In this document: positions 14,807-51,855 of the stretch, in pieces
How the letters are laid out: every line of letters begins with the position of its first letter
Numbering within the stretch: the first letter of the stretch is position 1
Virus record (IMG/VR): IMGVR_UViG_3300021963_000021
Span: 186,001-250,000 of that record
Reading direction: 5' to 3' (one strand)
DNA length: 64,000 bases
The notes under the pieces: generated by a model
Seen by the model: the letters and a program-made list of their open reading frames with translations, nothing else
What the model was told of the DNA's origin: nothing
Database searches by the model: none
Position numbers and translations under genes: made by a program

Positions 14807-15946
14807 TTAGCTCTCTAGTTGTATCACTGTGGTTGTAACTGTGATAGTTCTGGTCGATCCGCTTAGATTTGTTACTGCTGCGTAGATATTCGTTGTTGGT
14901 GTAGCATCGTCATTGTATCCTAGCACACCTGGTGAAAGTATCACAGTTTCTGAACCGGCTGTGATAACTTCCGCAATAACCCCTGCTCCTGCGCTAGGAT
15001 CAGTTCCTTGACTTCTGCTAGCGTCTGCTGTTCGTGCTGCGTCAGTGATGTAAAATCTAACCCATGCTGCTGCGTTGGTGTTTATTTTATACATCATGTA
15101 TGTTTTGTAACCTGTTATGGTTATATTGCCTGTGGCATTATTTGCCAGTGAAGCTGTAGTGCCACCGGCTGGAACTCTTGAACCTAGACCAGTCCCGCCA
15201 CCACCACCTGTTACTGTGGTAAAACTAAATCCTCCCGAGCCGTTAGTAGTCAGTACCTGTCCTACTGATCCGTCGGTTATACCTAAATTTAAAATACTTG
15301 TCGGTATTGTTGGTCTTCCTGATAGATCGCCGTATGCTCCGCTAGTAGCCACAGTAGCCAATGATGGTCTTCCTGATAGATCGCCGTACACACCTGATGT
15401 TGCTACAGTGGCCAATGAAGGCCTGCCAGATAGATCACCATATGCTCCGGACGTTGCTACTGTAGCAAATGTAGGTTTTCCAGATACGTTAGACCATGTT
15501 AAACTTGCTGATGTTATAAAACCAGCACCGTTAGTTAACTGATTAGTATTGGTCGGGATCGTAGGTGCTCCAGATACACTTGACCAATTCACTGTACCTG
15601 TCCACGCAGTGCTCTGCTGACTGCTATCTGGAAAATTTAAAGTATCTGCTGATAAGTTACCGACTGTGAGACTTCTGGTAGATGTATTACCTCGAGTTAA
15701 TACAGTATCTATAGTGTCAGTACCGCCCACAACTGCTATAGTTGTACTAGTCCAGGTGTTGGATTCTGGATCCCAACCTATAACATCATTGATCGATGTA
15801 CCGTTTGTTATTCCGAGATCTTCAATAGATTGCGGAATATCAAAATTATAAACTTCTTCAAAGTTGTCGTTTATATCTGATACTGCTAATCGAAGTTTAT
15901 CCCATGTTAAAGGGGGACTGCCTGGGGATATGATTTTTTTAGTCAT
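14807..15946 (-). CDS. tail fibre-like protein
   Basis: N-terminal LR.A...IN.NF motif, 18-aa repeats, Thr/Gly-rich. Confidence 0.6.
   Translation of the reverse strand: MTKKIISPGSPPLTWDKLRLAVSDINDNFEEVYNFDIPQSIEDLGITNGTSINDVIGWDPESNTWTSTTIAVVGGTDTIDTVLTRGNTSTRSLTVGNLSADTLNFPDSSQQSTAWTGTVNWSSVSGAPTIPTNTNQLTNGAGFITSASLTWSNVSGKPTFATVATSGAYGDLSGRPSLATVATSGVYGDLSGRPSLATVATSGAYGDLSGRPTIPTSILNLGITDGSVGQVLTTNGSGGFSFTTVTGGGGGTGLGSRVPAGGTTASLANNATGNITITGYKTYMMYKINTNAAAWVRFYITDAARTADASRSQGTDPSAGAGVIAEVITAGSETVILSPGVLGYNDDATPTTNIYAAVTNLSGSTRTITVTTTVIQLES
15311..15470 (-). repeat. 3 x 54-bp coding tandem repeat (ATVATSGxYGDLSGRPSL)
   Basis: gatagatc recurs at 15321, 15375 and 15429. Confidence 0.85.
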
Positions 15947-41537: not shown

Positions 41538-42110
41538 TCAATTACGATCGGTGTAATTGTAGTTGACCATAATGCCCCAACTTTCTTCTAGACGTTTTGA
41601 GCTTTGGTCAGCATTGAAATTCACAGACTGTAATTGAGCACCATTGCCAAGATGGAAACGAGCAACTGGATCTTTGCGTGTTTCTATAAACTCGCGGATC
41701 TGTTCTTCTGTCGGAACTTCGCTAAAATGCTTGCGAAGACTTGGAATAGGACTCAGCGTATATAACTGTTCGATGCCTTCTCTGCGGCAATATCTGAGAG
41801 CTTCTTGTATGATGTCAACGCCCACGCCCGCGGCTGCTCCGGGTAAACGGAACACGGTATAGAACATAGCTACTAGTTTTTGTTGACTTGGAGTTAGTAT
41901 GTCATTGACGCTGCGATTCATATGATCAGAGAGTTTGGCGCAGACTAGTGCCATTGGAGTACCTTGTTCTTCTAACGCAAATACAGTTCGACCGTCTACT
42001 AAACGATCTTCAATGGATATTCCTGGATGTACAGGATCCAATTCTAAAAACTTCAACCATTCTGAGTTAAACCCAGGATCACCAAGACGAACTAACATTT
42101 TATTCTCCAA
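41538..42110 (-). CDS. malonyl-CoA decarboxylase catalytic-domain-like protein
   Basis: TLSPIP, DPVARFHLGNGA, N..AD.S....ESWGIMVNY.Y. Confidence 0.75.
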   Translation of the reverse strand: MENKMLVRLGDPGFNSEWLKFLELDPVHPGISIEDRLVDGRTVFALEEQGTPMALVCAKLSDHMNRSVNDILTPSQQKLVAMFYTVFRLPGAAAGVGVDIIQEALRYCRREGIEQLYTLSPIPSLRKHFSEVPTEEQIREFIETRKDPVARFHLGNGAQLQSVNFNADQSSKRLEESWGIMVNYNYTDRN

Positions 42111-42146: not shown

Positions 42147-42172
42147 AAAAAAAAAGGACCCGAAGGTCCTTT
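42147..42172 (-). terminator. intrinsic terminator
   Basis: AAAGGACC-TTCG-GGTCCTTT followed by a T run. Confidence 0.85.
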
Positions 42173-42181
42173 GAACCTACA

Positions 42182-42394
42182 TCATTTTGATGATAGCAGA
42201 TCTTGAGCTTGTCGTACTTCGTTTTCTAAGTACTCAATTCTTGCTGCCGCTTCGTCTAACAAAGTGGCTATTTTATCTGGTGCGCCTTCTTCTACGCTCT
42301 TACGACCAGGAATTTGTCTCCTAATTTCAGCTCGCTTACGAAGTCGAAACACCAGACTCTGCTCGCTAACGGGCAGGTGGCTTTCATCTTTCAT
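42182..42394 (-). CDS. hypothetical protein
   Basis: 70-aa coupled ORF. Confidence 0.55.
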   Translation of the reverse strand: MKDESHLPVSEQSLVFRLRKRAEIRRQIPGRKSVEEGAPDKIATLLDEAAARIEYLENEVRQAQDLLSSK

Positions 42395-43281
42395 ATCCTC
42401 TCCATAAAGTTTCTAACCCAGGCCAGACGAGCTTGCTCGTCCATGGCTGTGTATTCAACAATGTTGGCACGGATAGCATCTACTAGTGGATAGTATTCTT
42501 CGTCTAGTTGGTGCTTGATATCTTTGTTCAAGTCCACTAACTTGTCTGTACGTGGATTGCGAGCAACCCATTTTGAAGTCAAGTAGTAAGGGCTCTTGAT
42601 CTTAGCACTCACACCATCTTCTGTATAGAATACATAACCTTCGTGTTTACATTCCTTGGCCATTGCTGATAGTCGTGCCATGTTAGTTGTTACACTTTCT
42701 GGCACAAAGCATCCTAGCACACGACTCATTTCCATTAACATGAACGGATCATGTTCGACTATAGAGTTCCATTTGTTTTCACGATAGCCTAGGATGTACA
42801 TGCCTTCCTTTTCAGGAACGATATGCGGGTCGTTACGGTGAACGCACTCAAACATAAATGTATATCCTTGCCAACGATCACACAAGTCAAAATACTTTGT
42901 TTCGTCGATCAGTTCACGTGCCATTTTAACATAGTCGCTGTCTGTGCTACCAGTAGTAGACACCAACAGTTTGCCGTTATGATAAGTCATAGCAACCATG
43001 AATCCGTTGACTTTACGAAATGCTGTAACTTTGGTTTCTGGAGCAAGCACTGGTGCTTCCTTTTCGATGCCATAGTTATAGATTTTAGTAAATGGGTATG
43101 TCACTAGATTGAAGTCAGTGTCTACAATGGATCCACGACATTCCGCAATAAAGGGATTCCACAGACTATCGTAGAACACTTTCTTCTTGTATTTGAGCAC
43201 GTAGATACCTTCACCAGCTTCTTTCATATTAACTAGGTTGCTGGTTTCTACATACTCCTTCAGCTCATCTTTAAACATCAT
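42391..43281 (-). CDS. T4 Rnl1-like RNA ligase
   Basis: ECRG, FTKIYNY, motif I KVNG, STTGS, FE, EGYV, KIKS.YY. Confidence 0.85.
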   Translation of the reverse strand: MMFKDELKEYVETSNLVNMKEAGEGIYVLKYKKKVFYDSLWNPFIAECRGSIVDTDFNLVTYPFTKIYNYGIEKEAPVLAPETKVTAFRKVNGFMVAMTYHNGKLLVSTTGSTDSDYVKMARELIDETKYFDLCDRWQGYTFMFECVHRNDPHIVPEKEGMYILGYRENKWNSIVEHDPFMLMEMSRVLGCFVPESVTTNMARLSAMAKECKHEGYVFYTEDGVSAKIKSPYYLTSKWVARNPRTDKLVDLNKDIKHQLDEEYYPLVDAIRANIVEYTAMDEQARLAWVRNFMERI

Positions 43282-43739
43282 GTTCTCCAGATTTCTTTAT
43301 AGCCTTCTTCTTCAGTTGGCCATTCAAAATTATCAATCATGCTGCGGACAACATGATCGGGGATTGATTTGCCAGGGCGGCTAGCCAAACGACGAGCGTG
43401 TTCTTCGGCAGACGGAGTAGGAAAGACCACAGCGATGTGCCAGTAGTCGGGTAACATACGGAACTTTCTAGCACGACTTTTTACAGTTGTGTTAGTTTGG
43501 TCCCAAATGATATCTCGACCTGCGGCCCTAGCACGAACTACAGCGCGAGTCATTAGACGAACAGCACGTGGCATTACTTCGTCAAAGACTTCGTTGTAGG
43601 TCTTGCCTAGGCGTTTAGCAAACTTTTCTACATAGACATCGGTGGAAATATATTCCATACCTACTGCCCAGGTTTGGCCTGCCAGCCATGTAGTTTTGCC
43701 ACTAGCCGGCACTCCAACTAAAATATATGCTTTAGCCAT
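43278..43739 (-). CDS. polynucleotide kinase-like P-loop kinase (AAA_33)
   Basis: GVPASGKTT, ISTD, IWDQTN, R...R...IP. Confidence 0.85.
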   Translation of the reverse strand: MAKAYILVGVPASGKTTWLAGQTWAVGMEYISTDVYVEKFAKRLGKTYNEVFDEVMPRAVRLMTRAVVRARAAGRDIIWDQTNTTVKSRARKFRMLPDYWHIAVVFPTPSAEEHARRLASRPGKSIPDHVVRSMIDNFEWPTEEEGYKEIWRT

Positions 43740-44280
43740 GATGTGATTTTACCTCTCCGGTCATTGCGTCTGCGATTGCACGTTCCATAGTAACAGCGAT
43801 CATTCCTGTCGCATCCATGCCCATATCACGACAGCGATAACGTTCCATTCCACTGGTACCACCGTGTAAGTGTCCGTGGAAATGAACAGCACCTCTGTGC
43901 ATTTGATCCCATTCAGCGATAGGATAATGGAACATAACTACCCTAGTTTTTTCATATGTCATACACAAGTACGGATGTACTTCTGCGAAACAACTACGAA
44001 ACACAGGGTCGTTTAACAATTTGCGATCGTGGTTGCCCTCGATCAAAATTTTTGTACCATTTAACCGACGCATGATGTTTACTGCTTTTGCCGCAGGCAA
44101 GAACGCAACATCACCTAATATGTAGACTGTGTCTTCCGGAGCGATAGTGTTATTCCATTCCAACACCATTTGCTCGTTCATATAGTCTACATCGTTGTTA
44201 AATCTTGCTCTCGACTGTGGACAGAATTTCATGATATTGGCATGCCCAAAGTGTAAGTCACTGGTTATCCATGTAGTCAT
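43732..44280 (-). CDS. calcineurin-like metallophosphoesterase
   Basis: SDLHFGH, LGD, GNHD, HYP, HGH.H. Confidence 0.9.
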   Translation of the reverse strand: MTTWITSDLHFGHANIMKFCPQSRARFNNDVDYMNEQMVLEWNNTIAPEDTVYILGDVAFLPAAKAVNIMRRLNGTKILIEGNHDRKLLNDPVFRSCFAEVHPYLCMTYEKTRVVMFHYPIAEWDQMHRGAVHFHGHLHGGTSGMERYRCRDMGMDATGMIAVTMERAIADAMTGEVKSHHG

Positions 44281-44303
44281 AATTCGCCCTCTTTATATTT
44301 CAA

Positions 44304-44675
44304 TTATTTCTTTAAAGCTTCTAGGGTAGCAAGCATTGAAGCCCATTGTGTGCTCGGGTCTACACCTTCATTGAAGTTGTGTAGCGCCATTAGGGTTTCA
44401 AATTTGCCTTCTGGAACCTTAAAGAAAATGTTAGCATAGGTACAATCGAAGTCGTCATCGGCGTCATGGCTGTACCAAGGGTGTTCTGACATTTCGTCAA
44501 AAACATCTTCGTAACTTTCTCGGTTACCGCCACCGTTGCGAGTATGAACAACGATATAACCATCTTCTAAATAGACATTTCGAAAACGACCGAAGTCTTC
44601 TCGAGTCTTACCTAACAGAGACAAAATTTTGTCAGTGTCAGGATTCATACCAAACAGCATATTGTACAATGACAT
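44304..44675 (-). CDS. hypothetical protein (start revised to MSLYNMLFG)
   Basis: AGGAG RBS before 44675. Confidence 0.55.
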   Translation of the reverse strand: MSLYNMLFGMNPDTDKILSLLGKTREDFGRFRNVYLEDGYIVVHTRNGGGNRESYEDVFDEMSEHPWYSHDADDDFDCTYANIFFKVPEGKFETLMALHNFNEGVDPSTQWASMLATLEALKK

Positions 44676-44688
44676 ATCGTCTCCTTTC

Positions 44689-45204
44689 TTAGTCCCAATC
44701 TTCCTCACGTTGCGGAGGAACCCAAATTTTCTTGTTGCCAAGCTCGTCGTATTCAAAAGCAACACCATTAATTGTGTGAGGCTCGTTTTCGTCATACGTC
44801 CAACCAAGCACTTTCATCATCTTGTGTTTGACCATTAAGTTGGGGCTACGAAAGACTTCAGTATCACGGAAGCCCATCATTACGCCGACTTCGCAGACAG
44901 CACCCGAACGACAAACACCAGCAACACAATGTACAACAACATTCATTCGTTGTTCCATTGCGTGTTCTAGCAGTCTCACTAGTTGTTCTGCTTGCTGATC
45001 AGTGACTTTGAATTCTTCGCCCCATTTGTCATCTCGTTCTAGATCTAAGAACTCAAACTGATGAGTTTCTTTGAACTGATGCCTAGGAGTAGGAAACTCC
45101 ATAGCAGGATCTACGATCTGTATCAACATAGAGTTGATACCAGCATCAATATGATGACCTTTCGGAATGTCTGCCAACGCTACGTTTTGTATCCAAGGAT
45201 TCAT
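44689..45204 (-). CDS. dual-specificity/tyrosine phosphatase-like protein
   Basis: VVVHCVAGVCRSG CX5R loop; GGAG RBS. Confidence 0.85.
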   Translation of the reverse strand: MNPWIQNVALADIPKGHHIDAGINSMLIQIVDPAMEFPTPRHQFKETHQFEFLDLERDDKWGEEFKVTDQQAEQLVRLLEHAMEQRMNVVVHCVAGVCRSGAVCEVGVMMGFRDTEVFRSPNLMVKHKMMKVLGWTYDENEPHTINGVAFEYDELGNKKIWVPPQREEDWD

Positions 45205-45206
45205 TG

Positions 45207-45884
45207 TTATCTCCATAGTAAGTCAAAGTTACCTTTGAGAACAGTAGAACATTTTGATCTACAACCAGTTAAATGATCTTGAACAGAGTCATCTTGGAAT
45301 CGGTAAGTGCGGATTTTATCTCCACGCATACCTGATCCTACCTGTTGGCGTCTATCACTTGCTATACTATTATTATACGATCTTTTGAGTTCTAAGTCAA
45401 TGCGCTGTTGTAAAGTTGCCATAGCTTCGTTGTAGCTATTTTGGCGACTTCGGCATTCGGCTTTGGCTATTATACCTGTAGGAAGGTGTGTGATGCGGCA
45501 GCTATTTTGGTGCTTGTTCCGAAATTGTCCACCCGCTCCTGTACCGCTGTACCATTCGATCTTGAGATCGTTTTTGGTAACAGCAACAGAGTCAGGATCT
45601 GGAGACCCGTCTATGACAGCGACGGTAACAGTTGAAGTGTGGACACGACCTTTTCGTTCGGTCGGAGGCACTCGCTGGATACGATGACCACCGGGCTCAT
45701 TATCTAAGCCTGATAGATCTACACCCTCTACAAGTATCGAACACTCGCCAGGACGTACATCTATCAGGCGGGTAGTTCAACCCAGTTTATTTCCTAGTTT
45801 TTGGTAAGCGGTCGCGAGATCACTTACGAATAGTTTACTATCTTCGCCGCCTTCTGCGGCACGGATTTCAATAGTGCGTTTCAT
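45207..45884 (-). CDS. prfA-like: class I release factor homologue (RF1-type PxT, GGQ; lacks domain 1) with in-frame UGA at codon 36
   Basis: MKRTIEIRAAEGGEDSKLF...KLG*TTRLI...GGHRIQRVPPTERKGRVHTS...GAGGQ...KIRTY; TGA at 45779-45777, same frame on both sides. The ORF track shows only the downstream part. Confidence 0.85.
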
Positions 45885-46099
45885 GGTTTTCTCCTTTTAT
45901 ACCAACTGTACTTGTCACCATTTGGTAACAGACCGTTGTTAACAGAATCGGCGCCAAAGACGCCGACTATTTCCATACCGTCACCGTTTATGGTAACAAG
46001 TATGCCTAATTCTTTTGCGAAAGCCATTGCTTCCGATAGATCTTTTACTGCTTCCACACAACCTCTACCCGTTGTGTCATTCCATTTTACTTCATACAT
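45881..46099 (-). CDS. hypothetical protein
   Basis: 72-aa coupled ORF. Confidence 0.5.
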   Translation of the reverse strand: MYEVKWNDTTGRGCVEAVKDLSEAMAFAKELGILVTINGDGMEIVGVFGADSVNNGLLPNGDKYSWYKRRKP

Positions 46100-46110
46100 T
46101 CTTTATTTAT

Positions 46111-46188
46111 TGGCCTGCCCGGAGGGATTCGAACCCCCGACCCACAGCTTAGAAGGCTGTTGCTCTAATCCTGCTGAGCTACGGGCAG
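46111..46188 (-). tRNA. tRNA-Arg(TCT)
   Basis: Cloverleaf, loop CTTCTAA, CCA. Confidence 0.95.
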
Positions 46189-46193
46189 AAATT

Positions 46194-46269
46194 TGGAGCG
46201 GGAGACGAGTCTCGAACTCGCGACATCTTGCTTGGAAGGCAAGTGCTCTACCAACTGAGCTACTCCCGC
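46194..46269 (-). tRNA. tRNA-Gly(TCC)
   Basis: Loop CTTCCAA, CCA. Confidence 0.95.
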
Positions 46270-46275
46270 AATGTC

Positions 46276-46479
46276 TTAGGTTGGAAAATATTTTTCCATA
46301 ACTTCCAATTTGTCCATATACTCAGCAATCTGAGCGACTTCTTTTTCGATAGCATCCATAATATCACTGTGTTCGTGGATTGCTGTTGGGTTGTTCAGCA
46401 TCACTTCGACATTCATTTTATGTTTAGTGATGTGTGATCGAAAGTGTTCTTTCGATGCTTCAATGAGTTCTTTACGCAT
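46276..46479 (-). CDS. hypothetical protein (start MRKELIE)
   Basis: Coupled to the upstream ORF stop. Confidence 0.55.
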   Translation of the reverse strand: MRKELIEASKEHFRSHITKHKMNVEVMLNNPTAIHEHSDIMDAIEKEVAQIAEYMDKLEVMEKYFPT

Positions 46480-46736
46480 TATGAGTTCACCGTTTCGCTG
46501 TTTTGCTTCGAATTCCACTCTTGTTTGGCCTTTTGATAGGCGTCTTCGCTTAGGCCATGCCAACCAATACAGTCGCCTGTAGGACTACGACCACAACCGC
46601 AAGTACCTTTTTTCATATCTTCAACTTTTGGAGTCACTTTGTCTTTCCTAAAAATTAAATCGTAATTGTTGTTAAACGCTTTCGATGATGCTCTTGATTG
46701 TATAGCATCACCAGTTATATCGTTTCTTGCTACCAT
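46479..46736 (-). CDS. CDGSH-like Fe-S motif protein
   Basis: CGCGRSPTGDCIGWH (3Cys-1His). Confidence 0.55.
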   Translation of the reverse strand: MVARNDITGDAIQSRASSKAFNNNYDLIFRKDKVTPKVEDMKKGTCGCGRSPTGDCIGWHGLSEDAYQKAKQEWNSKQNSETVNS

Positions 46737-46752
46737 CTACATATCCTCAAAT

Positions 46753-46831
46753 TGGTCCGGGAAGTGGGATTCGAACTCACGATCTCCTGCTCCCAAAGCA
46801 GGCGCTTTAAGCCAGACTAAGCTACACCCGG
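46753..46831 (-). tRNA. tRNA-Pro(TGG)
   Basis: Loop TTTGGGA, CCA. Confidence 0.9.
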
Positions 46832-46835
46832 AAAT

Positions 46836-46909
46836 TGGTTGCGGGTCCTGGAATCGAACCAAGGACTAGAGCTTATGAGACTCTCGAGATACCCCTTCTC
46901 CAACCCGCT
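46836..46909 (-). tRNA. tRNA-Met(CAT), initiator-like
   Basis: Loop CTCATAA, unpaired 1:72, fMet-like D arm. Confidence 0.8.
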
Positions 46910-46916
46910 ATAAACC

Positions 46917-47492
46917 TTATAGGATTCCTTCTTTGGTCAGTGTTGCTACTGCTTCATCGCTTAGAGGAATCTCTGTCTTAATGTTAAGTTCAAGGACTTC
47001 GTCATTGATCTTTTGTTTCTGCTTGCGTAGATTGCTAAGTTCAGTCTTGAACTTGTCAATGTCTCCTGTGCTGAGCACAGAAGTGTCTACGGTATCACTG
47101 TAGCCGTAAATGCTACGACGACTAGTTTCGTTCTTGTCGTTGCGTATCTTATCCAACTTGCCGTTGATTACGACCAAGTCAGCGACTGGTGCGTGTCTGA
47201 CCATTGCTTCTAGCTGACTGATACGCTTGTCAATGAAAGCCGCACGAGTCAACAACAGGTCGATTCCGCTCTGGGCGTTTGCCGCACCTACTAGGCCGCG
47301 GATGTTATATTGCGCAGCCAACAACAGGCCACGACGCTGATCGTTTTCCAACAGCTTCTTGTTGGCAGCATCAATTTCGGCCTTTGCGTCCTGGAACTCA
47401 TTAAGCTGGACATCCAACTTAATATCGATATTTTTCAAAGCATCGCTGATGCTGTTCTGGACTACGTTTGCTTTACGAAGAGTGATGTTCAT
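46917..47492 (-). CDS. hypothetical coiled-coil protein
   Basis: 191 aa with its own promoter and AAGGA RBS. Confidence 0.65.
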   Translation of the reverse strand: MNITLRKANVVQNSISDALKNIDIKLDVQLNEFQDAKAEIDAANKKLLENDQRRGLLLAAQYNIRGLVGAANAQSGIDLLLTRAAFIDKRISQLEAMVRHAPVADLVVINGKLDKIRNDKNETSRRSIYGYSDTVDTSVLSTGDIDKFKTELSNLRKQKQKINDEVLELNIKTEIPLSDEAVATLTKEGIL

Positions 47493-47515
47493 GTGTTTTT
47501 CCTTATGATTTATCT

Positions 47516-47544
47516 ATTATACTGCCTTGACATGCTGTTGTCAA
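47516..47544 (-). promoter_or_regulatory. sigma70 promoter TTGACA-N17-TATAAT
   Basis: Perfect consensus. Confidence 0.8.
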
Positions 47545-47545
47545 C

Positions 47546-47816
47546 AAAAAAATGACGGATCGGTAAAAGGTCAAGTAATAGACCGGACAATAGACAGTGG
47601 AAGGTTTGTAATCTTCCTATGACAATGTACAAGGTACAAAGCACAGAGGTCTATATATTTCCGATTAACAAATGACATTCTATTAGGGATCGGATCACAT
47701 AAACACGGACAGTTTTCAAGACTGTTTGCGTTAAGTTCGGATTAGGCTTGGAGCCTAAGCCATTTTGTCCATCCTCATCTACCTTTTACTTCACCGGCTA
47801 GTTTTAATAAACTAGC
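47546..47816 (-). ncRNA. candidate structured ncRNA (about 270 nt)
   Basis: Nested long-range stems and several hairpins; no ORF on the minus strand. Confidence 0.5.
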
Positions 47817-47821
47817 AAAAC

Positions 47822-47897
47822 TGGTGCCGGTTGTCGGATTCGAACTGACCACATCCGCCTTACAAGAGCGGCGCTCTACCTAATGAGCTAAACCGGC
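47822..47897 (-). tRNA. tRNA-Thr(TGT)
   Basis: Loop CTTGTAA, CCA. Confidence 0.95.
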
Positions 47898-47920
47898 ATA
47901 AAACTATATATCAAACAACT

Positions 47921-48012
47921 TGGCGGAGATAGTTGGATTCGAACCAACGGTAGAGTTTAACCCCTACGACGGTTTAGCAAACCGCTGCCTTCAGCCACTC
48001 AGCCATATCTCC
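47921..48012 (-). tRNA. tRNA-Ser(GCT)
   Basis: Loop TTGCTAA, long variable arm. Confidence 0.95.
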
Positions 48013-48016
48013 GTAT

Positions 48017-48106
48017 TGGCGGAAGCGGTGAGATTCGAACTCACGGAACATTTCTGTTCGTCGGTTTTCAAGACCGGTGCAATCAGCCAGACTCTGCCAC
48101 ACTTCC
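48017..48106 (-). tRNA. tRNA-Ser(TGA)
   Basis: Loop CTTGAAA, long variable arm. Confidence 0.95.
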
Positions 48107-48111
48107 ATAAA

Positions 48112-48187
48112 TGGTAGGTCCTGACAGTCTCGAACTGCCGACATCCGCCGTGTAAAGGCGGCGCTCTACCAACTGAGCTAAGGACCC
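48112..48187 (-). tRNA. tRNA-Val(TAC)
   Basis: Loop TTTACAC, CCA. Confidence 0.95.
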
Positions 48188-48269
48188 AAAAGATCTATTC
48201 TGAAACACACTGGCTGTTGCTTGTCATTGTCTTTAACTACCTCTCGGTGGCGGTAGACCAATGTGTTTT

Positions 48270-49165
48270 AGAATAGTGTTAAGACTGAGATTACATCTTA
48301 ACCATAAGCACCTCTAGCATTACCGTACACCTTGCGAGCATACGTTCTCTAGATATCCACTGAGCCCTATTGCTAGGTATCCCAGTCTGCTTACAGTATC
48401 GCCGTTTTAAGTCAGGCAGTAGACTTGACGCCATATGCTATTCTACACCATCTATCCCGTTAACCTTGCGAGCTATTCGAGTGCGCTAACACTCTACGAA
48501 ACTTCCAGTATAAACTAATGTCACCTTGCGAGCTTCATTAGACTTGATTGTGTTACCACTCAAGTATTAGATACTTTTCACATATGACCGAGGCAGTCTT
48601 TGCGTTTTTGTTTAATGGCTGGAGTTGAACCAGCAACATTCTGTTTAATAGACAGACGATCTACCATTGATCTACATTGCAACCTACCGTGATGAGCTAC
48701 CTCTGTTGCTGTATACTCTTTTGGAATACACAATACAACTCACCACATACCTTTCCTCTCGCGGAGTAATCAGTGATGTTTCACGACCAGTGTCCTGCGT
48801 CAAAACAGTCCACCGCCCATTTACATTGCGCTAAAGCCCTTAGGAGCGACCCCTCGGACAATAACACTACCCTTTCTCATACCAGTTAATAAGTTGGTTT
48901 TGTATGGAAGTCAGCACCACCTGTTACTTTTCACGCACCCTGGTTCCCTTGCGGGCCAGTCGATACGCATTCTTCCCCATACACTTACTTGGCTGTTACA
49001 TCCACCGGTTTTGTCAGTGAACGCATCCTCACGGATGTGAGCAGGCTTGTTTACACGAACCATTGCTGGCGCTAGTATGTAGGCATTCTAGCTTTGGGTC
49101 GATCGCTCGACTTATTCTTCGTAGACGGCGGACCGCCTACAGGATGATAAACCACCCTAGAATTT
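48270..49165 (-). ncRNA. large structured ncRNA, GOLLD-like
   Basis: About 0.9 kb with no long ORF inside a tRNA array; repeated GCAA-capped hairpins and long-range stems. Confidence 0.55.
48611..48681 (-). pseudogene. tRNA-like domain (anticodon ATT) embedded in the large ncRNA
   Basis: Perfect D, anticodon and T arms; two acceptor mismatches; no CCA. Confidence 0.7.
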
Positions 49166-49251
49166 TTAAACCATATAAAAACACACTCACGGACATGGCT
49201 TGTTGGATGCAGCCTGCCTAACCGAACCAACTTCGGCAGTGTGTTTTTATA

Positions 49252-49335
49252 TGGTGCCCCAACCGAGACTTGAACTCGGACGCACTAGGCACTGGCTTCT
49301 AAGACCAGCGTGTCTACCAATTCCACCATCGGGGC
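49252..49335 (-). tRNA. tRNA-Leu(TAG)
   Basis: Loop CTTAGAA, long variable arm. Confidence 0.95.
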
Positions 49336-49393
49336 AATGTTTGTCTAACAATGTTAAAGAGCGTTACGCTGTTTTGTTTAACAGCATATGTAT

Positions 49394-49422
49394 ATTATAT
49401 CTTCTAACTGCCGCTGTGTCAA
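49394..49422 (-). promoter_or_regulatory. internal sigma70 promoter TTGACA-N17-TATAAT
   Basis: Perfect consensus upstream of tRNA-Leu(TAG) and the large ncRNA. Confidence 0.8.
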
Positions 49423-49452
49423 CACATTCTGGACATATTAGAAAATATTTTT

Positions 49453-49526
49453 TGGTGCCCAGACCAAGAATTGAACTTGGAATAATCGCTTATCAAGCGA
49501 CCGTTATACCATTTAACTATCCGGGC
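49453..49526 (-). tRNA. tRNA-Ile(GAT)
   Basis: Loop TTGATAA, CCA. Confidence 0.93.
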
Positions 49527-49535
49527 ATATTGAAT

Positions 49536-49750
49536 TTGTTGTAGTAGTGCCACCATCGTTATTGGCACCATTCACCTGGATTAACAAAGCCCGGGCAGGA
49601 CTCGGTACGTCACTTGGGATACTAGTCCAGTTAGCAACCAATCTGCGCCGATCTTCCGATCAGCCGGGAGTTGAACCCGTCCCCTTCTACTATTTCGGTA
49701 GTTCGAACTTACCTAGATAGCGTGACATTCTCTTGCTGACACTACAACAA
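49536..49750 (-). ncRNA. candidate structured ncRNA (215 nt)
   Basis: 10-bp terminal stem, two T-loop-like hairpins, GGAA tetraloop. Confidence 0.55.
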
Positions 49751-49754
49751 AACT

Positions 49755-49829
49755 TGGCTCCCCAGGGTGGGATCGAACCACCGACAAACGGATTAACAGT
49801 CCGCTACTCTACCTCTGAGCTACTAGGGA
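49755..49829 (-). tRNA. tRNA-Asn(GTT)
   Basis: Loop CTGTTAA. Confidence 0.95.
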
Positions 49830-49835
49830 ATAAAT

Positions 49836-49910
49836 TGGTGGAGGATAGCGGAATCGAACCGCTGACTCAAGCGTGCAAGGCTAGTGTTTTCCCAATTAGA
49901 CTAATCCCCC
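49836..49910 (-). tRNA. tRNA-Ala(TGC)
   Basis: Loop CTTGCAC. Confidence 0.93.
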
Positions 49911-49914
49911 AAAT

Positions 49915-49990
49915 TGGCGCCTCGTAGGGGAGTCGAACCCCTGTGTTCCGCTAGACAGGCGGGCATAATAGACCGTTATATGAACGAGGC
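49915..49990 (-). tRNA. tRNA-Asp(GTC)
   Basis: Loop CTGTCTA. Confidence 0.92.
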
Positions 49991-50000
49991 AAAACTTGTT

Positions 50001-50076
50001 TGGTAGCAGTAGTTGGACTCGAACCAACGATAAACACCGTATGAAGGTGCCGCATTAGCCGCTATGCTATACTGCC
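50001..50076 (-). tRNA. tRNA(CAT), elongator Met or Ile2
   Basis: Loop TTCATAC, paired acceptor. Confidence 0.85.
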
Positions 50077-50080
50077 ATAT

Positions 50081-50225
50081 CCATTTAGAAGTAACACAGT
50101 TTACTATTCTCTTGCTACCGAATGTGTAGTACCTTACAGGTCTACGTTACTAGTATCATCGGCTTTCCGCTTCGAACAAGGTTAGGTCTGATCATGACCC
50201 GACGAGCTGTGTTACTACTAAATGG
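50081..50225 (-). ncRNA. candidate structured ncRNA (145 nt)
   Basis: 18-bp terminal stem with one mismatch; multibranch interior. Confidence 0.55.
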
Positions 50226-50228
50226 TAA

Positions 50229-50305
50229 TGGTGTGCCCTCTGGGATTCGAACCCAGGACCCTCTGATTAAAAGTCAGATGCTCTAACCTACTGAGCTAAG
50301 GGCAC
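50229..50305 (-). tRNA. tRNA-Lys(TTT)
   Basis: Loop CTTTTAA. Confidence 0.95.
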
Positions 50306-50360
50306 AATCGTTTACCAGATTTACCATCATCTCCCATGGTAATTTCCTCCTTAAAAAACT

Positions 50361-50436
<76 letters not shown>

Positions 50437-50442
50437 ATTATA

Positions 50443-50518
50443 TGGTACACGGTACGGGAATCGAACCCGTCTTTCCGCCTTGAAAGGGCAGCGTCCTCAA
50501 CCGATAGACGAACCGTGC
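50443..50518 (-). tRNA. tRNA-Glu(TTC)
   Basis: Loop CTTTCAA. Confidence 0.95.
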
Positions 50519-50546
50519 GTAAAAAATTTTCAATTGTCAAAGAACG

Positions 50547-50623
50547 TGGAGCACAGGGTGGGACTCGAACCCACGAATCAACAGTTTTGCAGACTGCGCC
50601 ATTGGCCTCTCTGGTACCTGTGC
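50547..50623 (-). tRNA. tRNA-Cys(GCA)
   Basis: Loop CTGCAAA, U73. Confidence 0.95.
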
Positions 50624-50637
50624 GTTAAAGTCTATCA

Positions 50638-50666
50638 AGTATATGATAAATCAAACAGCTTGTCAA
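50638..50666 (-). promoter_or_regulatory. internal sigma70 promoter TTGACA-N17-TATACT
   Basis: Near-consensus, upstream of tRNA-Cys. Confidence 0.75.
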
Positions 50667-50751
50667 CTACTATTTTAGGTTTTTGTCGATGATGATCATC
50701 AAAACCGCTAACATGATTAGAACTGCCAATGCCCCATGTGAGTCTCCTTGT

Positions 50752-50825
50752 TGGTGCTCTAGCCAAGAATTGAACTTGAAATTCAGTCTTACCAAGACTG
50801 TGTTATACCATTTAACTACAAGAGC
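50752..50825 (-). tRNA. tRNA-Thr(GGT)
   Basis: Loop TTGGTAA. Confidence 0.93.
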
Positions 50826-50826
50826 A

Positions 50827-50905
50827 TGGTACCCCTGCTCAGATTTGAACTGAGAACAACTTCTCCTTTTGAGAGAGACGACTTTACCAATTTGTCCACA
50901 GGGGC
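50827..50905 (-). tRNA. tRNA-Leu(CAA), short variable arm
   Basis: Loop CTCAAAA; variable region of only about 7 nt. Confidence 0.8.
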
Positions 50906-50911
50906 ATACTT

Positions 50912-50987
50912 TGGTGCTGCCTCCTGGGATCGAACCAGGTTCCTCGGTTCTTCAGACCGGTGCTATGACCACATCAGCTAAAGCAGC
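50912..50987 (-). tRNA. tRNA-Phe(GAA)
   Basis: Loop CTGAAGA. Confidence 0.93.
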
Positions 50988-50997
50988 ATTTAATCTT

Positions 50998-51072
50998 TGG
51001 TGGATCTTGTAGGATTTGAACCTACGACCAACAGCGTGTCGAGCTGCTACTCTACCACTGAGCTAAAGATCC
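50998..51072 (-). tRNA. tRNA-Val(GAC)
   Basis: Loop TCGACAC. Confidence 0.9.
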
Positions 51073-51073
51073 T

Positions 51074-51147
51074 TGGGGTGAAACCGGGAATCGAACCCTG
51101 TCTACCTGTTTCACAGACAGGTGTGCGACCACTACACTAGTAACACC
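51074..51147 (-). tRNA. tRNA-His(GTG)
   Basis: Loop CTGTGAA, G-1:C73; some stem mismatches. Confidence 0.85.
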
Positions 51148-51152
51148 ATTAT

Positions 51153-51229
51153 TGGCCGGCCCGGAGAGACTCGAACTCCCAACCTCTAGTTTCGAAGACT
51201 AGCACTCTAATCCATTGAGTTACGGACCG
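51153..51229 (-). tRNA. tRNA-Arg(TCG)
   Basis: Loop CTTCGAA. Confidence 0.93.
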
Positions 51230-51235
51230 ATAACT

Positions 51236-51309
51236 TGGCTGGGGATGATGGATTCGAACCACCACAGACGGAATCAAAATCCGTAGTCCTACCATTAGAC
51301 GAATCCCCA
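51236..51309 (-). tRNA. tRNA-Gln(TTG)
   Basis: Loop TTTTGAT. Confidence 0.93.
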
Positions 51310-51313
51310 ATAT

Positions 51314-51387
51314 TGGCACCGGACCAGAGACTCGAACTCCGACGAACGGTTTTGGAGACCGTCATGCTGCCATTACATCAGCCCGAT
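51314..51387 (-). tRNA. tRNA-Trp(CCA)
   Basis: Loop CTCCAAA; D stem ATGT/GCAT gives U11:A24. Confidence 0.93.
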
Positions 51388-51388
51388 A

Positions 51389-51742
51389 TTATTTGATTGT
51401 GTCGTACCGAGTATCTTCGGTTTCGATAAAGTTGACCATTCCAACAGAGATATGATATCCTTCTGTTTTCATAGCTTGATATGCTTTTTGATACACGTCT
51501 GATTCTAAGAGATTCTTTTGAAAATCTCTAGCTTTAAACATGTCTTTAGAAAAGAAGTAGACGTTTTCTACTTGTGTTGTAGCATCCCAATCCCATGACT
51601 GCTTATCTTCTATAAGCCCTTGTTCTACACAGTCTTTTAGAAACGCAACGAATTCTAAGGAGATATCTTCTCTAAAGTTGATATCATCTTGGGTCTGAAA
51701 TTCAGCTCCGTAGTAAATTTGCTGTATTTGTGTAGCTATCAT
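51389..51742 (-). CDS. hypothetical protein inside the tRNA array
   Basis: 117 aa, AAGGA RBS, TAAATA motif upstream. Confidence 0.55.
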   Translation of the reverse strand: MIATQIQQIYYGAEFQTQDDINFREDISLEFVAFLKDCVEQGLIEDKQSWDWDATTQVENVYFFSKDMFKARDFQKNLLESDVYQKAYQAMKTEGYHISVGMVNFIETEDTRYDTIK

Positions 51743-51768
51743 GATTGGGATCCTTTTAGCTATTTATC

Positions 51769-51855
51769 TGGTGGAGGAAGTAAGATTCGAACCTACTAGT
51801 CCCTAAGAAAACAGATTTACAGTCTGCCGCACCCCTCCAACTGTGCCGTTCCTCC
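51769..51855 (-). tRNA. tRNA-Tyr(GTA)
   Basis: Loop CTGTAAA, long variable arm. Confidence 0.95.

What the first reader, a model, noticed from the sequence alone, without database searches (positions are those of the whole stretch)
45207..45884. Truncated RF1-type release factor gated by an in-frame UGA at a conserved Trp
The frame is continuous from ATG 45884 (AGGAG RBS) to TAA 45207 except for TGA at codon 36 (KLG-UGA-TTR), which aligns with the GW of RF1 (YAxxxGWxVE). The protein has the PxT (PPT) and GGQ motifs but no domain 1, so it is PrfH-sized with RF1 (UAA/UAG) specificity. The rest of the genome uses TGA as a stop, so synthesis would need UGA readthrough, here in a UGA-A context. 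That would make the factor only when RF2 termination is weak or Trp-tRNA misreads UGA, a possible termination-sensing switch analogous to RF2 frameshift autoregulation.
Basis: partly seen in the sequence, partly recalled or inferred. Interest (0 to 1): 0.85.

Follow-up and report, generated by a model that had tools for sequence, protein, structure and literature searches.

The report
Phage release factor gated by UGA
A jumbo phage carries a shortened RF1-type translation release factor that can only be made by reading through a stop codon (UGA, at a conserved tryptophan position); selection keeps that stop in every relative, which makes it a new kind of termination-linked expression gate.

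Summary
Window 45884..45207 (-) is one frame of 225 codons, broken only by TGA at codon 36. It encodes an RF1-type factor with the PPT and GGQ motifs and no domain 1.

The TGA is not a lesion. All 114 homologous genes recovered from viral contigs (76 unique, down to about 61% identity) have TGA at this codon. Purine-ending Lys/Glu/Gln codons in the same genes flipped A/G about 12 times each, and this codon never changed. The 35-codon N-piece is under purifying selection (pN/pS 0.25). It supplies the first strand and the codon-reading helix of the fold. TGA is a normal stop in this phage (21 of 66 genes).

More distant domain-1-less relatives in other phages and in bacterial tRNA arrays are recoded at or near the same site, by UGA readthrough or by prfB-like +1 frameshift cassettes (SD, CUU UGA/UAG).

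The most likely mechanism is programmed UGA readthrough as Trp, which ties synthesis of the factor to UGA-termination (RF2) efficiency. The recoding is well supported. The regulatory logic is inferred. The gene sits between a 28-tRNA array and an RNA-repair cassette. I found no prior description.

The parts
45891..45896 (-). Shine-Dalgarno AAGGAG, 6 nt upstream of the ATG
   Evidence: AAGGAG-like sites sit upstream of the start in nearly all relatives.
45780..45884 (-). ORF part 1, codons 1-35. It encodes strand beta1 and helix alpha5 of RF domain 2, including the alpha5 tip GGED (45851-45840).
   Evidence: PCRF/prfA match to RF1 profile positions 107-135. pN/pS is 0.25. In the AF2 model this part forms strand 2-11 and helix 14-34, with block pLDDT of 80-91.
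45777..45779 (-). In-frame UGA at codon 36, the recoding site, in the context GGY UGA R. It aligns with the conserved Trp of RF1.
   Evidence: It is invariant in 76/76 unique homologues, with 0 changes against about 12 at comparable purine-ending codons.
45207..45776 (-). ORF part 2, codons 37-225 plus the TAA stop. It holds the rest of domain 2/4 with PPT (45668-45660) and domain 3 with GGQ (45533-45525).
   Evidence: Foldseek's top hits are ribosome-bound RF1, with TM 0.76.
45881..46099 (-). Conserved 72-aa ORF of unknown function. Its TGA stop overlaps the RF start (ATGA), which suggests translational coupling.
   Evidence: It is conserved directly upstream of the RF gene in most relatives. 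It has no family hit.
46111..51855 (-). Array of 28 tRNA genes directly upstream on the same strand. There is no UCA (opal suppressor) anticodon.
   Evidence: Relatives also have the RF gene beside their tRNA array.
51314..51387 (-). Phage tRNA-Trp(CCA), the candidate near-cognate reader of UGA-36. It has U11:A24, where E. coli trpT has U11:G24.
   Evidence: That A24 is the Hirsh UGA-suppressor state comes from established knowledge and is used only as a lead.
44689..45216 (-). Dual-specificity/PTP-type phosphatase gene immediately downstream of the RF gene. It stays near the RF gene in relatives.
   Evidence: Pfam DSPc, Tc-R-P and PTP-SAK hits. Synteny is shown.
42391..44280 (-). RNA-repair cassette: calcineurin-like phosphoesterase (43732-44280), AAA_33 polynucleotide-kinase-like P-loop kinase (43278-43739) and T4 Rnl1-type RNA ligase (42391-43281).
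   Evidence: The ligase and kinase are found downstream of the RF gene in a minority of the relatives (about 7 loci); the phosphoesterase matches in most of them, mostly at low identity.
42153..47544 (-). Probable transcription unit. It runs from a consensus sigma-70-like promoter (47544-47516, 12/12) to a strong terminator-like hairpin (42172-42153), and spans four tRNAs, the 72-aa ORF, the RF gene and the repair genes.
   Evidence: These are pattern matches only, not evidence of function.

Best explanation
The locus is a functional gene for a domain-1-less, RF1-type class-I release factor (a 'mini-RF') of a roughly 364-kb jumbo phage. The full-length 225-residue protein is made only when a ribosome reads UGA-36 as a sense codon. 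The most probable reader is near-cognate Trp-tRNA(CCA), which restores the Trp that canonical RF1 has at that position. Termination at UGA-36 by host RF2 yields only a 35-residue fragment.

Selection keeps the stop, rather than TGG, because it works as an expression gate. Output of the factor rises when UGA termination is slow relative to Trp-tRNA decoding, meaning RF2 is limiting or Trp-tRNA is abundant, and it falls when RF2 is ample. The product reads UAA/UAG and should work without RF3, because the RF3-contacting domain 1 is missing. It could therefore take over termination at the phage's majority UAA stops and free RF2 for UGA.

The gene is one component of a phage island that backs up or repairs the translation apparatus (tRNA array, mini-RF, phosphatase/kinase/RNA ligase).

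Shown here: the gene is intact, selected and universally recoded, and it is RF1-like in sequence and fold. Inferred: Trp insertion, RF2 dependence, and the physiological role.
For: 1. Selection keeps the stop. All 114 genes (76 unique) have TGA at this codon with 0 parsimony changes. Sixteen conserved Lys/Glu/Gln codons in the same genes changed A<->G 2-21 times (mean 12.4). The two other invariant Trp codons are always TGG.
2. The N-piece is translated and constrained. pN/pS is 0.25 with pS 0.71, the same as the C-piece at 0.29.
3. The N-piece is structurally indispensable. It forms strand 1 and helix alpha5, whose tip reads the first stop-codon base, and it is confidently modelled as part of the RF1 fold.
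4. No conserved start codon or SD follows the stop. Codon 40 is CTG, CTT, CTA, TTG and others.
5. UGA aligns with the RF1 Trp. A same-clade relative, L047, has TGG there.
6. TGA is a genuine stop in this phage. No other gene is interrupted, and no UCA tRNA is present in the window or in the 26 related loci scanned.
7. No SECIS or other conserved RNA structure is present.
8. Relatives in other phages and in bacteria are recoded at or near the same site. Some have an in-frame TGA. Others have +1 frameshift cassettes with an SD-like GGAGG/GGGGG, a 3-nt spacer and CUU UGA, which is the architecture of the RF2-sensing prfB site. Only 4 of about 94 classifiable genes lack recoding.
9. The RF1-type decoding residues (Gln, PPT, His-Thr) are invariant in 122 unique sequences.
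10. The context is never +4 U. It is A in 54 and G in 20 of 74, and +4 U is the strongest terminator context (abstract of PMC5289835).
Against: - There is no experimental evidence of readthrough, of its efficiency, or of the inserted residue.
- An RF1-type product gated by an RF2-read codon gives no direct feedback loop. The proposed indirect loop (relief of RF2 at UAA) is my inference.
- Some frameshift-type homologues use UAG or UAA instead of UGA (8 of 35 frameshift-type genes). RF2-specific sensing therefore cannot be the universal logic of the family.
- No readthrough-stimulating RNA element was found, so efficiency may be only the basal leak of about a percent.
- The host is unknown, so RF2 and tRNA-Trp properties cannot be assessed.
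Confidence: 0.6

Rival explanations
1. Dosage limiter only. The UGA caps expression of a potentially harmful RF3-independent release factor at the basal readthrough level of about a percent, with no sensing function.
For: No stimulatory RNA structure was found. The RBS is strong and the start is coupled to the upstream ORF, so a downstream throttle would make sense. Overexpressed RFs are toxic (PMC12421855).
Against: A weak RBS or start codon would do the same job and would be expected in at least some of 76 diverged lineages. Instead the stop is invariant. Homologues use high-efficiency prfB-type frameshift cassettes, which are sensors rather than simple throttles. Any stop-codon gate also responds to RF concentration by its nature.
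Confidence: 0.18
2. Temporal gate opened by the phage's own tRNA-Trp. The phage tRNA-Trp(CCA) carries U11:A24, the state of the E. coli Hirsh UGA suppressor. It would read UGA-36 efficiently, so the factor appears only after the tRNA array is expressed.
For: Both phage tRNA-Trp genes available have U11:A24, while E. coli trpT has U11:G24. The RF gene always lies beside the tRNA array and is probably co-transcribed with part of it.
Against: An efficient opal-reading tRNA would also extend the 32% of phage proteins that end in TGA. Many normal tRNAs have a Watson-Crick 11:24 pair, and the tRNA-Trp genes of the L058 and L066 arrays have C11:G24. Frameshift-type homologues do not need tRNA-Trp. 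Only two phage tRNA-Trp sequences could be examined.
Confidence: 0.12
3. True autoregulation by a factor with broadened specificity. The mini-RF itself recognises UGA (perhaps all three stops), so UGA-36 is a prfB-like negative feedback site.
For: The family uses UGA, UAG and UAA at its recoding sites. In contrast, prfB never uses the codon its product cannot read (PMC12421855). Mini-RFs differ from RF1 at two decoding elements: the alpha5 tip is GGxD instead of GGxE in 120 of 122 unique sequences, and the middle residue of PxT is always Pro, as in RF2's SPF.
Against: All residues known to set RF1 specificity (first Pro and third Thr of the tripeptide, and the Gln and His-Thr equivalents) are conserved. 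The residue equivalent to the omnipotence mutation RF2-E167K is still acidic. HMM and fold scores are clearly RF1 above RF2.
Confidence: 0.08
4. Dead gene, nonsense allele or assembly error.
For: One in-frame stop early in the gene. Public annotation splits such genes.
Against: The same stop occurs in 76 unique sequences from dozens of independent metagenomes. Both pieces are under purifying selection and all catalytic motifs are intact.
Confidence: 0.005
5. Global code change (host or phage reads UGA as Trp or Gly), selenocysteine insertion, or a two-chain protein made by reinitiation after the stop.
For: Gene callers using code 4 produce full-length 'W36' proteins.
Against: Those calls come from TGA in the DNA. 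21 of 66 genes in the window end in TGA and none contains it in frame. Trp-111 and Trp-224 are always TGG and codon 36 is never TGG. No UCA tRNA, no SECIS and no conserved hairpin were found. No conserved start codon or SD follows the stop.
Confidence: 0.02

Closest known systems
prfB (RF2) programmed +1 frameshift autoregulation
   Same: [quoted passage not shown] In both, bypass competes with RF2. Homologues of the phage gene carry the same cassette (SD, 3 nt, CUU UGA C).
   Different: In the window the bypass is in-frame readthrough, not a frameshift. The product is RF1-type, so the loop is cross-regulation by RF2 rather than self-regulation. The site lies in domain 2 of a protein that has no domain 1. 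Reviews state that readthrough-gated bacterial-type RF genes, and recoding in RF1 genes, are unknown (PMC5009743; PMC12421855).
Mimivirus/Megavirus class-I release factor gene (Jeudy et al. 2012, PMC3521657)
   Same: It is a virus-encoded release factor whose synthesis requires stop-codon readthrough (plus a frameshift), and this is interpreted as bacterial-style autoregulation.
   Different: That protein is of the eukaryotic/archaeal eRF1 type, in a eukaryotic virus. It is unrelated in fold and omnipotent, so it truly autoregulates.
Leviphage Qbeta A1 (readthrough) protein
   Same: It uses programmed in-frame readthrough of UGA by tRNA-Trp in a bacterial virus. This comes from established knowledge and was not tested here.
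   Different: In Qbeta the readthrough adds a C-terminal extension to a functional coat protein. Here the product upstream of the stop is a non-functional 35-residue fragment, and the inserted Trp is a conserved core residue.
PrfH-RtcB2 ribosome rescue and repair module
   Same: PrfH is a domain-1-less class-I RF homologue encoded next to an RNA ligase and RNA-repair genes (PMC6514570; PMC9304027 abstract).
   Different: PrfH lacks the stop-codon tripeptide and recognises damaged ribosomes. The phage factor keeps all RF1 decoding residues. The TIGR03072 score is 38.9 against a cutoff of 166.65. The ligase here is Rnl1-type, not RtcB.
Release factors of stop-codon-recoded phages (Borges et al., bioRxiv 10.1101/2021.08.26.457843) and of huge phages (Al-Shayeb et al. 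2020, PMC7162821)
   Same: These are phage-encoded RF1/RF2 genes near tRNAs and other translation genes.
   Different: Those reports concern genome-wide code change with suppressor tRNAs, and the 'code change' genes are themselves in standard code. Here the genome uses the standard code and the RF gene alone carries the in-frame stop.
RF-1 genes noted inside tRNA arrays of mycobacterial genomes and phages (Morgado & Vicente 2018, PMC5966550)
   Same: An RF1-like gene is associated with a mobile tRNA array.
   Different: No recoding or truncation was reported there.

Membership tests
Bacterial class-I release factor superfamily (PCRF + RF-1 domains) | RF-1 (GGQ) domain and PCRF codon-recognition domain | tested here: met
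   PF00472 scores 2.6e-19. PF03462 hits both pieces. GGQ is at codons 118-120. Foldseek gives TM 0.76 to ribosome-bound RF1.
RF1 (prfA) | PxT tripeptide plus the Gln and His-Thr decoding residues (UAA/UAG specificity) | tested here: met
   The sequence QRVPPTE..GRVHTS is invariant in 122 unique relatives. The prfA HMM scores above prfB (158.6 against 99 bits). PDB RF1 scores 145 bits against 90 for RF2. Specificity itself was not assayed.
RF1 (prfA) | Full four-domain architecture including N-terminal domain 1 (the RF3/L11-stalk contact), and the equivalog score | tested here: not met
   The protein starts at about RF1 residue 112. The 158.6-bit score is below the 400-bit equivalog cutoff. Mini-RFs form their own clade, with 100/100 support, apart from E. 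coli RF1/RF2 and a canonical RF1.
RF2 (prfB) | SPF tripeptide | tested here: not met
   The tripeptide is PPT, not SPF.
PrfH | Match to the PrfH model; altered decoding domain without PxT/SPF; operon with RtcB | tested here: not met
   TIGR03072 scores 38.9 against a cutoff of 166.65. PDB PrfH scores 29 bits. PxT is present. The neighbouring ligase is Rnl1-type. Only the lack of domain 1 is shared.
ArfB / GGQ-only peptidyl-tRNA hydrolases | GGQ domain with a C-terminal tail and no codon-recognition domain | tested here: not met
   Domain 2/4 is present and conserved.
Programmed stop-codon readthrough | In-frame stop with the ORF continuing in the same frame; both parts under purifying selection; the stop itself conserved against sense replacement | tested here: met
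Programmed stop-codon readthrough | Demonstrated readthrough product and identity of the inserted residue | not testable with these tools
   This needs a reporter assay or mass spectrometry.
prfB-type +1 programmed frameshift | SD-like element, 3-nt spacer, CUU UGA C, with the downstream ORF in the +1 frame | tested here: not met
   In the window the downstream ORF is in frame 0 and no CUU precedes the stop. The feature is met in homologues such as L054, L057, L058, L062, L066 and L176-L239.
Stop-codon-reassigned (code 4) phage | Many genes with in-frame TGA, plus an opal suppressor tRNA | tested here: not met
   within the 64-kb window. The other 300 kb of the genome was not seen.
Selenoprotein gene | UGA followed by a bacterial SECIS hairpin | tested here: not met
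   No conserved structure was found (alifold -7.45 kcal/mol). Rfam gives no hit. The UGA aligns with Trp.

The most novel reading that the evidence does not exclude
Mini-RFs are a previously unrecognised, widespread class of mobile class-I release factors. They lack domain 1, have GGxD at the alpha5 tip and carry a PPT tripeptide. They ride with tRNA arrays in phages and mobile elements, and their genes almost always carry a stop-codon checkpoint (readthrough, or a prfB-like +1 frameshift at UGA, UAG or UAA).

In the boldest version of this reading, they have broadened (omnipotent) stop-codon specificity, so every one of these checkpoints is a true autoregulatory loop. Alternatively, the UGA gate senses RF2 being drawn away by ArfA-type rescue of ribosomes on damaged mRNA, which would link induction of the factor to the RNA damage that the adjacent repair cassette deals with.
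Probability: 0.12. Interest if true: 0.95.

Novelty: new variant of a known kind. Interest (0 to 1): 0.86.

Why it matters
Regulation of a release-factor gene by an in-frame stop that is read through was proposed before RF genes were sequenced. It has been reported as never found in bacterial-type RF genes (PMC5009743). A 2025 survey found no programmed recoding in RF1 genes (PMC12421855). This phage gene, and the large family around it, is such a case in natural sequences.

It gives a compact, testable system for three questions: how phages monitor and supplement termination capacity, whether RF1-type factors can work without domain 1 and RF3 in vivo, and how readthrough and +1 frameshifting interconvert in evolution at one site.

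There is also a practical consequence. Thousands of these genes are mis-annotated in public databases as fragments, pseudogenes or code-4 proteins.

Tried and rejected
- A megablast of the region against 50,697 phage records found nothing. tblastn found only hits below 60% identity. No cultured relative is available.
- I searched for a conserved RNA structure or SECIS around the stop. RNAalifold on 28 sequences gave -7.45 kcal/mol with little covariation. Rfam gave nothing but the neighbouring tRNAs.
- I searched for an opal suppressor tRNA in the window and in 26 related loci and found none.
- I looked for other TGA-interrupted genes in the window and found none.
- I looked for conserved protein neighbours of the bacterial mini-RFs by all-against-all BLAST of flanking ORFs. 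Nothing was shared beyond the RF itself and an antisense-ORF artefact. tRNA arrays are shared by some.
- I tested the upstream 72-aa ORF as an Arf-like adaptor. It has no Pfam, PHROG or Atlas lead and no resemblance I could establish.
- I checked for an RF2-E167K-like charge flip as a route to omnipotence. The equivalent residue is Asp, so this was rejected.
- I asked whether huge-phage mini-RFs with two in-frame TGAs reflect a code change. The loci are too short to tell.
- Nine literature searches found no description of a recoded RF1-type gene.

Full report
**1. Observation**

On the minus strand, an ATG at 45884-45882 lies 6 nt after AAGGAG. It opens a frame that runs for 225 codons to TAA (45209-45207), with one interruption: TGA at codon 36 (45779-45777), in the context GGT TGA A.

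Both pieces match release-factor models.
- In Pfam, the C-piece hits RF-1 at 2.6e-19 and PCRF, and the 35-residue N-piece hits PCRF at 4e-5.
- In NCBIfam, prfA scores 158.6 bits, prfB 99 and prfH 38.9. All three are below the equivalog cutoffs.
- Against the PDB, a 79%-identical homologue matches RF1 (145 bits) better than RF2 (90) or PrfH (29). The match begins at about residue 112 of E. coli RF1, so domain 1 is absent.

The stop aligns column-for-column with the RF1 tryptophan. PPT (codons 73-75), GGQ (118-120), and the RF1-type Gln and His-Thr decoding residues are all present.

**2. The stop is not a lesion and not a code change**

The window comes from IMGVR_UViG_3300021963_000021, a 363,943-bp viral contig.

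- *Conservation.* All 37 first-scan viral relatives that cover the site have TGA at the same codon. They fall to about 61% amino-acid identity and give 28 unique genes. All 74 complete genes in a second scan do too. Pooled, this makes 114 genes and 76 unique sequences.
- *Comparison with neighbouring codons.* On a tree of the 76 sequences, codon 36 shows 0 changes. Sixteen conserved Lys/Glu/Gln codons in the same genes switched A/G in the third position 2-21 times each (mean 12.4). The two other invariant Trp codons are TGG in all 76. A neutral TGA<->TGG exchange would therefore have been seen about a dozen times. Selection keeps a stop at codon 36 and keeps sense codons at the other two Trp positions.
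- *Selection on the N-piece.* pN/pS is 0.25 with saturated pS of 0.71, the same as the C-piece at 0.29.
- *Code-4 artefacts.* Proteins in public collections that read 'W36' are code-4 gene calls on short contigs, and their DNA has TGA.
- *Stop usage in the window.* Of 66 tiled ORFs, 21 end in TGA, 39 in TAA and 6 in TAG. No other ORF pair is joined across a TGA.
- *Suppressor tRNAs.* None of the 28 tRNAs in the window, and none of the confidently typed tRNAs in the 26 related loci scanned, has a UCA anticodon; one untyped tRNA-like call in L034 has UCA in its loop.

**3. Why the two pieces must be joined**

An AlphaFold2 model of the homologue has mean pLDDT 76.8. Its best structural matches are ribosome-bound RF1, with TM 0.76.

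Residues 1-35 form the first strand and helix alpha5 of domain 2 (block pLDDT 80-91). The tip of alpha5 (GGED here) is the element that reads the first base of the stop codon in RF1 and RF2, according to established structural knowledge. A C-piece made alone would lack it.

No conserved start codon or SD follows the stop. Codon 40 varies among CTG, CTT, CTA, TTG, GTG and CCC. The +1 frame after the stop closes within five codons. In-frame readthrough is the only route that fits.

**4. How the stop is probably read**

No conserved RNA structure or SECIS follows the UGA. The only invariant context is GGN UGA R, with A at +4 in 54 and G in 20 of 74 genes, and never U. +4 U is the strongest terminator context (abstract of PMC5289835).

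UGA is the leakiest bacterial stop, and its near-cognate reader is tRNA-Trp, as in Qbeta A1 (established knowledge). Trp is also the ancestral residue at this position, and the clade member L047 encodes it as TGG.

The phage's own tRNA-Trp(CCA) has U11:A24, where E. coli trpT has U11:G24. A24 is the Hirsh UGA-suppressor state (established knowledge). This is a lead only, because Watson-Crick 11:24 pairs are common in tRNAs.

**5. The wider family**

A scan of one genome per bacterial species recovered 29 domain-1-less 'PPT' release-factor genes. A second viral scan gave 65 more classifiable ones.

| Recoding type | Bacterial genomes | Second viral scan |
|---|---|---|
| In-frame TGA readthrough | 10 (one of them, L069, has a further in-frame stop) | 42, plus 2 with two in-frame TGAs |
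| +1 frameshift at CUU UGA | 11 | 16 |
| +1 frameshift at CUU UAG | 3 | 4 |
| +1 frameshift at CUU UAA | 0 | 1 |
| Unclear | 1 | (12 loci unclassifiable) |
| No recoding | 4 | 0 |

- The bacterial readthrough cases include isolates: Jiella sp. LLJ827, Thalassospira xianhensis and a Cupriavidus plasmid.
- The bacterial CUU UGA frameshift cases include Thiobacillus denitrificans DSM 12475 and Achromobacter anxifer.
- Most frameshift sites have GGAGG or GGGGG three nucleotides upstream. This is the architecture of the E. coli prfB site, CTT TGA C.
- The sites lie either exactly at the Trp position or about nine codons downstream.
- In a maximum-likelihood tree the mini-RFs form one clade (100/100 support) apart from E. 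coli RF1 and RF2 and a canonical RF1. They split into three sub-clades, and the phage clade groups with the alphaproteobacterial readthrough genes.

Several of the bacterial genes lie inside large tRNA arrays: 31 tRNAs in Thiobacillus, 33 in a Chloroflexota MAG, and 15 on a Variovorax megaplasmid. RefSeq annotates the Variovorax gene as two CDSs, 'hypothetical protein' and 'peptide chain release factor-like protein'.

Two decoding-site features set the family apart from RF1. The alpha5 tip is GGxD instead of GGxE in 120 of 122 unique sequences, and the tripeptide is always PPT.

**6. Genomic setting**

The gene is the first protein gene but one after a 28-tRNA array on the same strand. Its ATG overlaps the TGA of a conserved 72-codon ORF (ATGA).

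It is followed by four repair-type genes:
- a DSP/PTP-type phosphatase;
- a calcineurin-like phosphoesterase;
- an AAA_33 polynucleotide-kinase-like kinase;
- a T4 Rnl1-type RNA ligase.

Together these form an RNA-repair cassette. The phosphatase and the phosphoesterase are found near the RF gene in most relatives, and the kinase and ligase in a minority of them.

A 12/12 sigma-70-like promoter at 47544-47516 and a strong terminator-like hairpin at 42172-42153 bracket this block. These are pattern matches only. The arrangement recalls PrfH-RtcB, but PrfH membership fails on sequence, on motifs and on ligase type.

**7. Mechanism and rivals**

*Best supported.* Programmed UGA-to-Trp readthrough makes the level of a domain-1-less RF1-type factor depend on how slowly UGA is terminated, which means on RF2 activity relative to Trp-tRNA. 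The product should read UAA/UAG. It should not need RF3, because N-terminally truncated RF1/RF2 keep codon-specific release in vitro but lose the RF3 interaction (Mora et al. 2003, cited in PMC6514570; the content is from my own knowledge).

UAA ends 59% of the window's genes, and RF2 shares that load. Extra RF1-type activity would free RF2 for UGA, which closes an indirect feedback loop. This last step is my inference.

*Rivals.*
- A passive dosage throttle.
- A temporal gate opened by the phage tRNA-Trp.
- True autoregulation by a factor with broadened specificity. This is suggested by the mix of UGA, UAG and UAA sites and by the alpha5-tip change. It is opposed by the intact RF1 determinants and by an acidic residue at the RF2-E167 equivalent.
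- Pseudogene, sequencing error, genome-wide code change, selenocysteine insertion and a split protein are effectively excluded.

**8. Novelty**

Atkins et al. [quoted passage not shown] They note only the giant-virus eRF1 case (PMC3521657).

A 2025 survey of 12,753 genomes found no programmed frameshifting in prfA and never found TAG in the prfB motif.

Phage RFs have been reported, and an RF-1 gene inside tRNA arrays has been noted, in neither case with recoding. Within the searchable literature I found no description of this gene family or of its recoding.

I rate it a new variant of a known kind (regulatory recoding of a release-factor gene), of high interest. The recoding itself is close to certain. 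The regulatory logic is unproven.

Noticed in passing
window 42391-45216 (-): An RNA-repair cassette lies directly downstream of the RF gene. It holds a DSP/PTP-type phosphatase, an unknown 167-aa ORF, a calcineurin-like phosphoesterase, an AAA_33 PNK-like kinase and a T4 Rnl1-type RNA ligase. Relatives mostly keep the phosphatase and phosphoesterase downstream of the RF gene; about 7 loci also show the kinase or ligase. The pairing of an RF homologue with a ligase recalls PrfH-RtcB.
   Followed up: partly
L054, L056-L060, L062, L066, L072, L077, L078 (bacterial); L163, L173-L239 (viral): Domain-1-less PPT release-factor genes in other phages and in bacteria carry prfB-like +1 frameshift cassettes (GGAGG/GGGGG, 3 nt, CTT TGA) at or near the Trp position. 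Public annotation does not recognise this recoding.
   Followed up: partly
L047, L068, L075, L176, L188, L190, L233 (CTT TAG); L182 (CTT TAA): Some frameshift-type mini-RF genes use UAG or UAA as the shift-site stop. prfB never uses TAG. This raises the question of which factor these sites sense.
   Followed up: no
L058:1825-9356, L066:448-6357, L079:510-10538: Bacterial mini-RF genes sit inside large tRNA arrays: 31 tRNAs in Thiobacillus denitrificans DSM 12475, 33 in a Chloroflexota MAG, and 15 on a Variovorax megaplasmid. The mini-RF therefore appears to travel with mobile tRNA arrays.
   Followed up: partly
window 45840-45851 (-), and all mini-RF loci: The alpha5 tip, which contacts the first stop-codon base, is GGxD in 120 of 122 unique mini-RFs. 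Canonical RF1 and RF2 have GGxE. The tripeptide is always PPT.
   Followed up: partly
window 51314-51387 (-); L031:1622-1695: The phage tRNA-Trp(CCA) has U11:A24, the base pair created by the Hirsh UGA-suppressor mutation of E. coli tRNA-Trp, which has U11:G24 in the wild type.
   Followed up: partly
L160 (LR745206.1, 634-kb huge phage), L185, L208: Mini-RF genes of AT-rich huge phages have two in-frame TGAs eight codons apart (..EH*..SI*LTG..). The fetched loci are too short to say whether these genomes read TGA as sense.
   Followed up: partly
L079:6827-7531 (Variovorax sp. WDL1 plasmid 2): RefSeq splits the recoded mini-RF gene into a 'hypothetical protein' and a 'peptide chain release factor-like protein'. 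A SecB-like chaperone gene follows it.
   Followed up: no
window 48610-48681 (-): ARAGORN calls a tRNA-Asn with the unusual anticodon ATT. It folds poorly and may be a degenerate or mis-called tRNA.
   Followed up: partly
L034:2029-2117: An 89-nt tRNA-like gene has a long variable arm and an irregular anticodon loop containing UCA. ARAGORN could not type it. It lies in a distant relative's tRNA array.
   Followed up: no
window 45881-46099 (-): A conserved 72-aa ORF with a basic C-terminal tail (..YSWYKRRKP) is coupled to the RF start by an ATGA overlap. It has no family match.
   Followed up: partly
window 41538-42110 (-): A 190-aa ORF has a strong hit (1.5e-20) to only the last ~40 positions of the malonyl-CoA decarboxylase C-terminal domain. 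This is an odd match for a phage gene.
   Followed up: no
window 45372-45400 (-): A near-consensus (11/12) sigma-70-like promoter motif lies inside the RF coding region. It could drive the downstream repair genes independently.
   Followed up: no
window 15946-24180 (-): A 2,744-aa ORF has tail-fibre-like segments.
   Followed up: no
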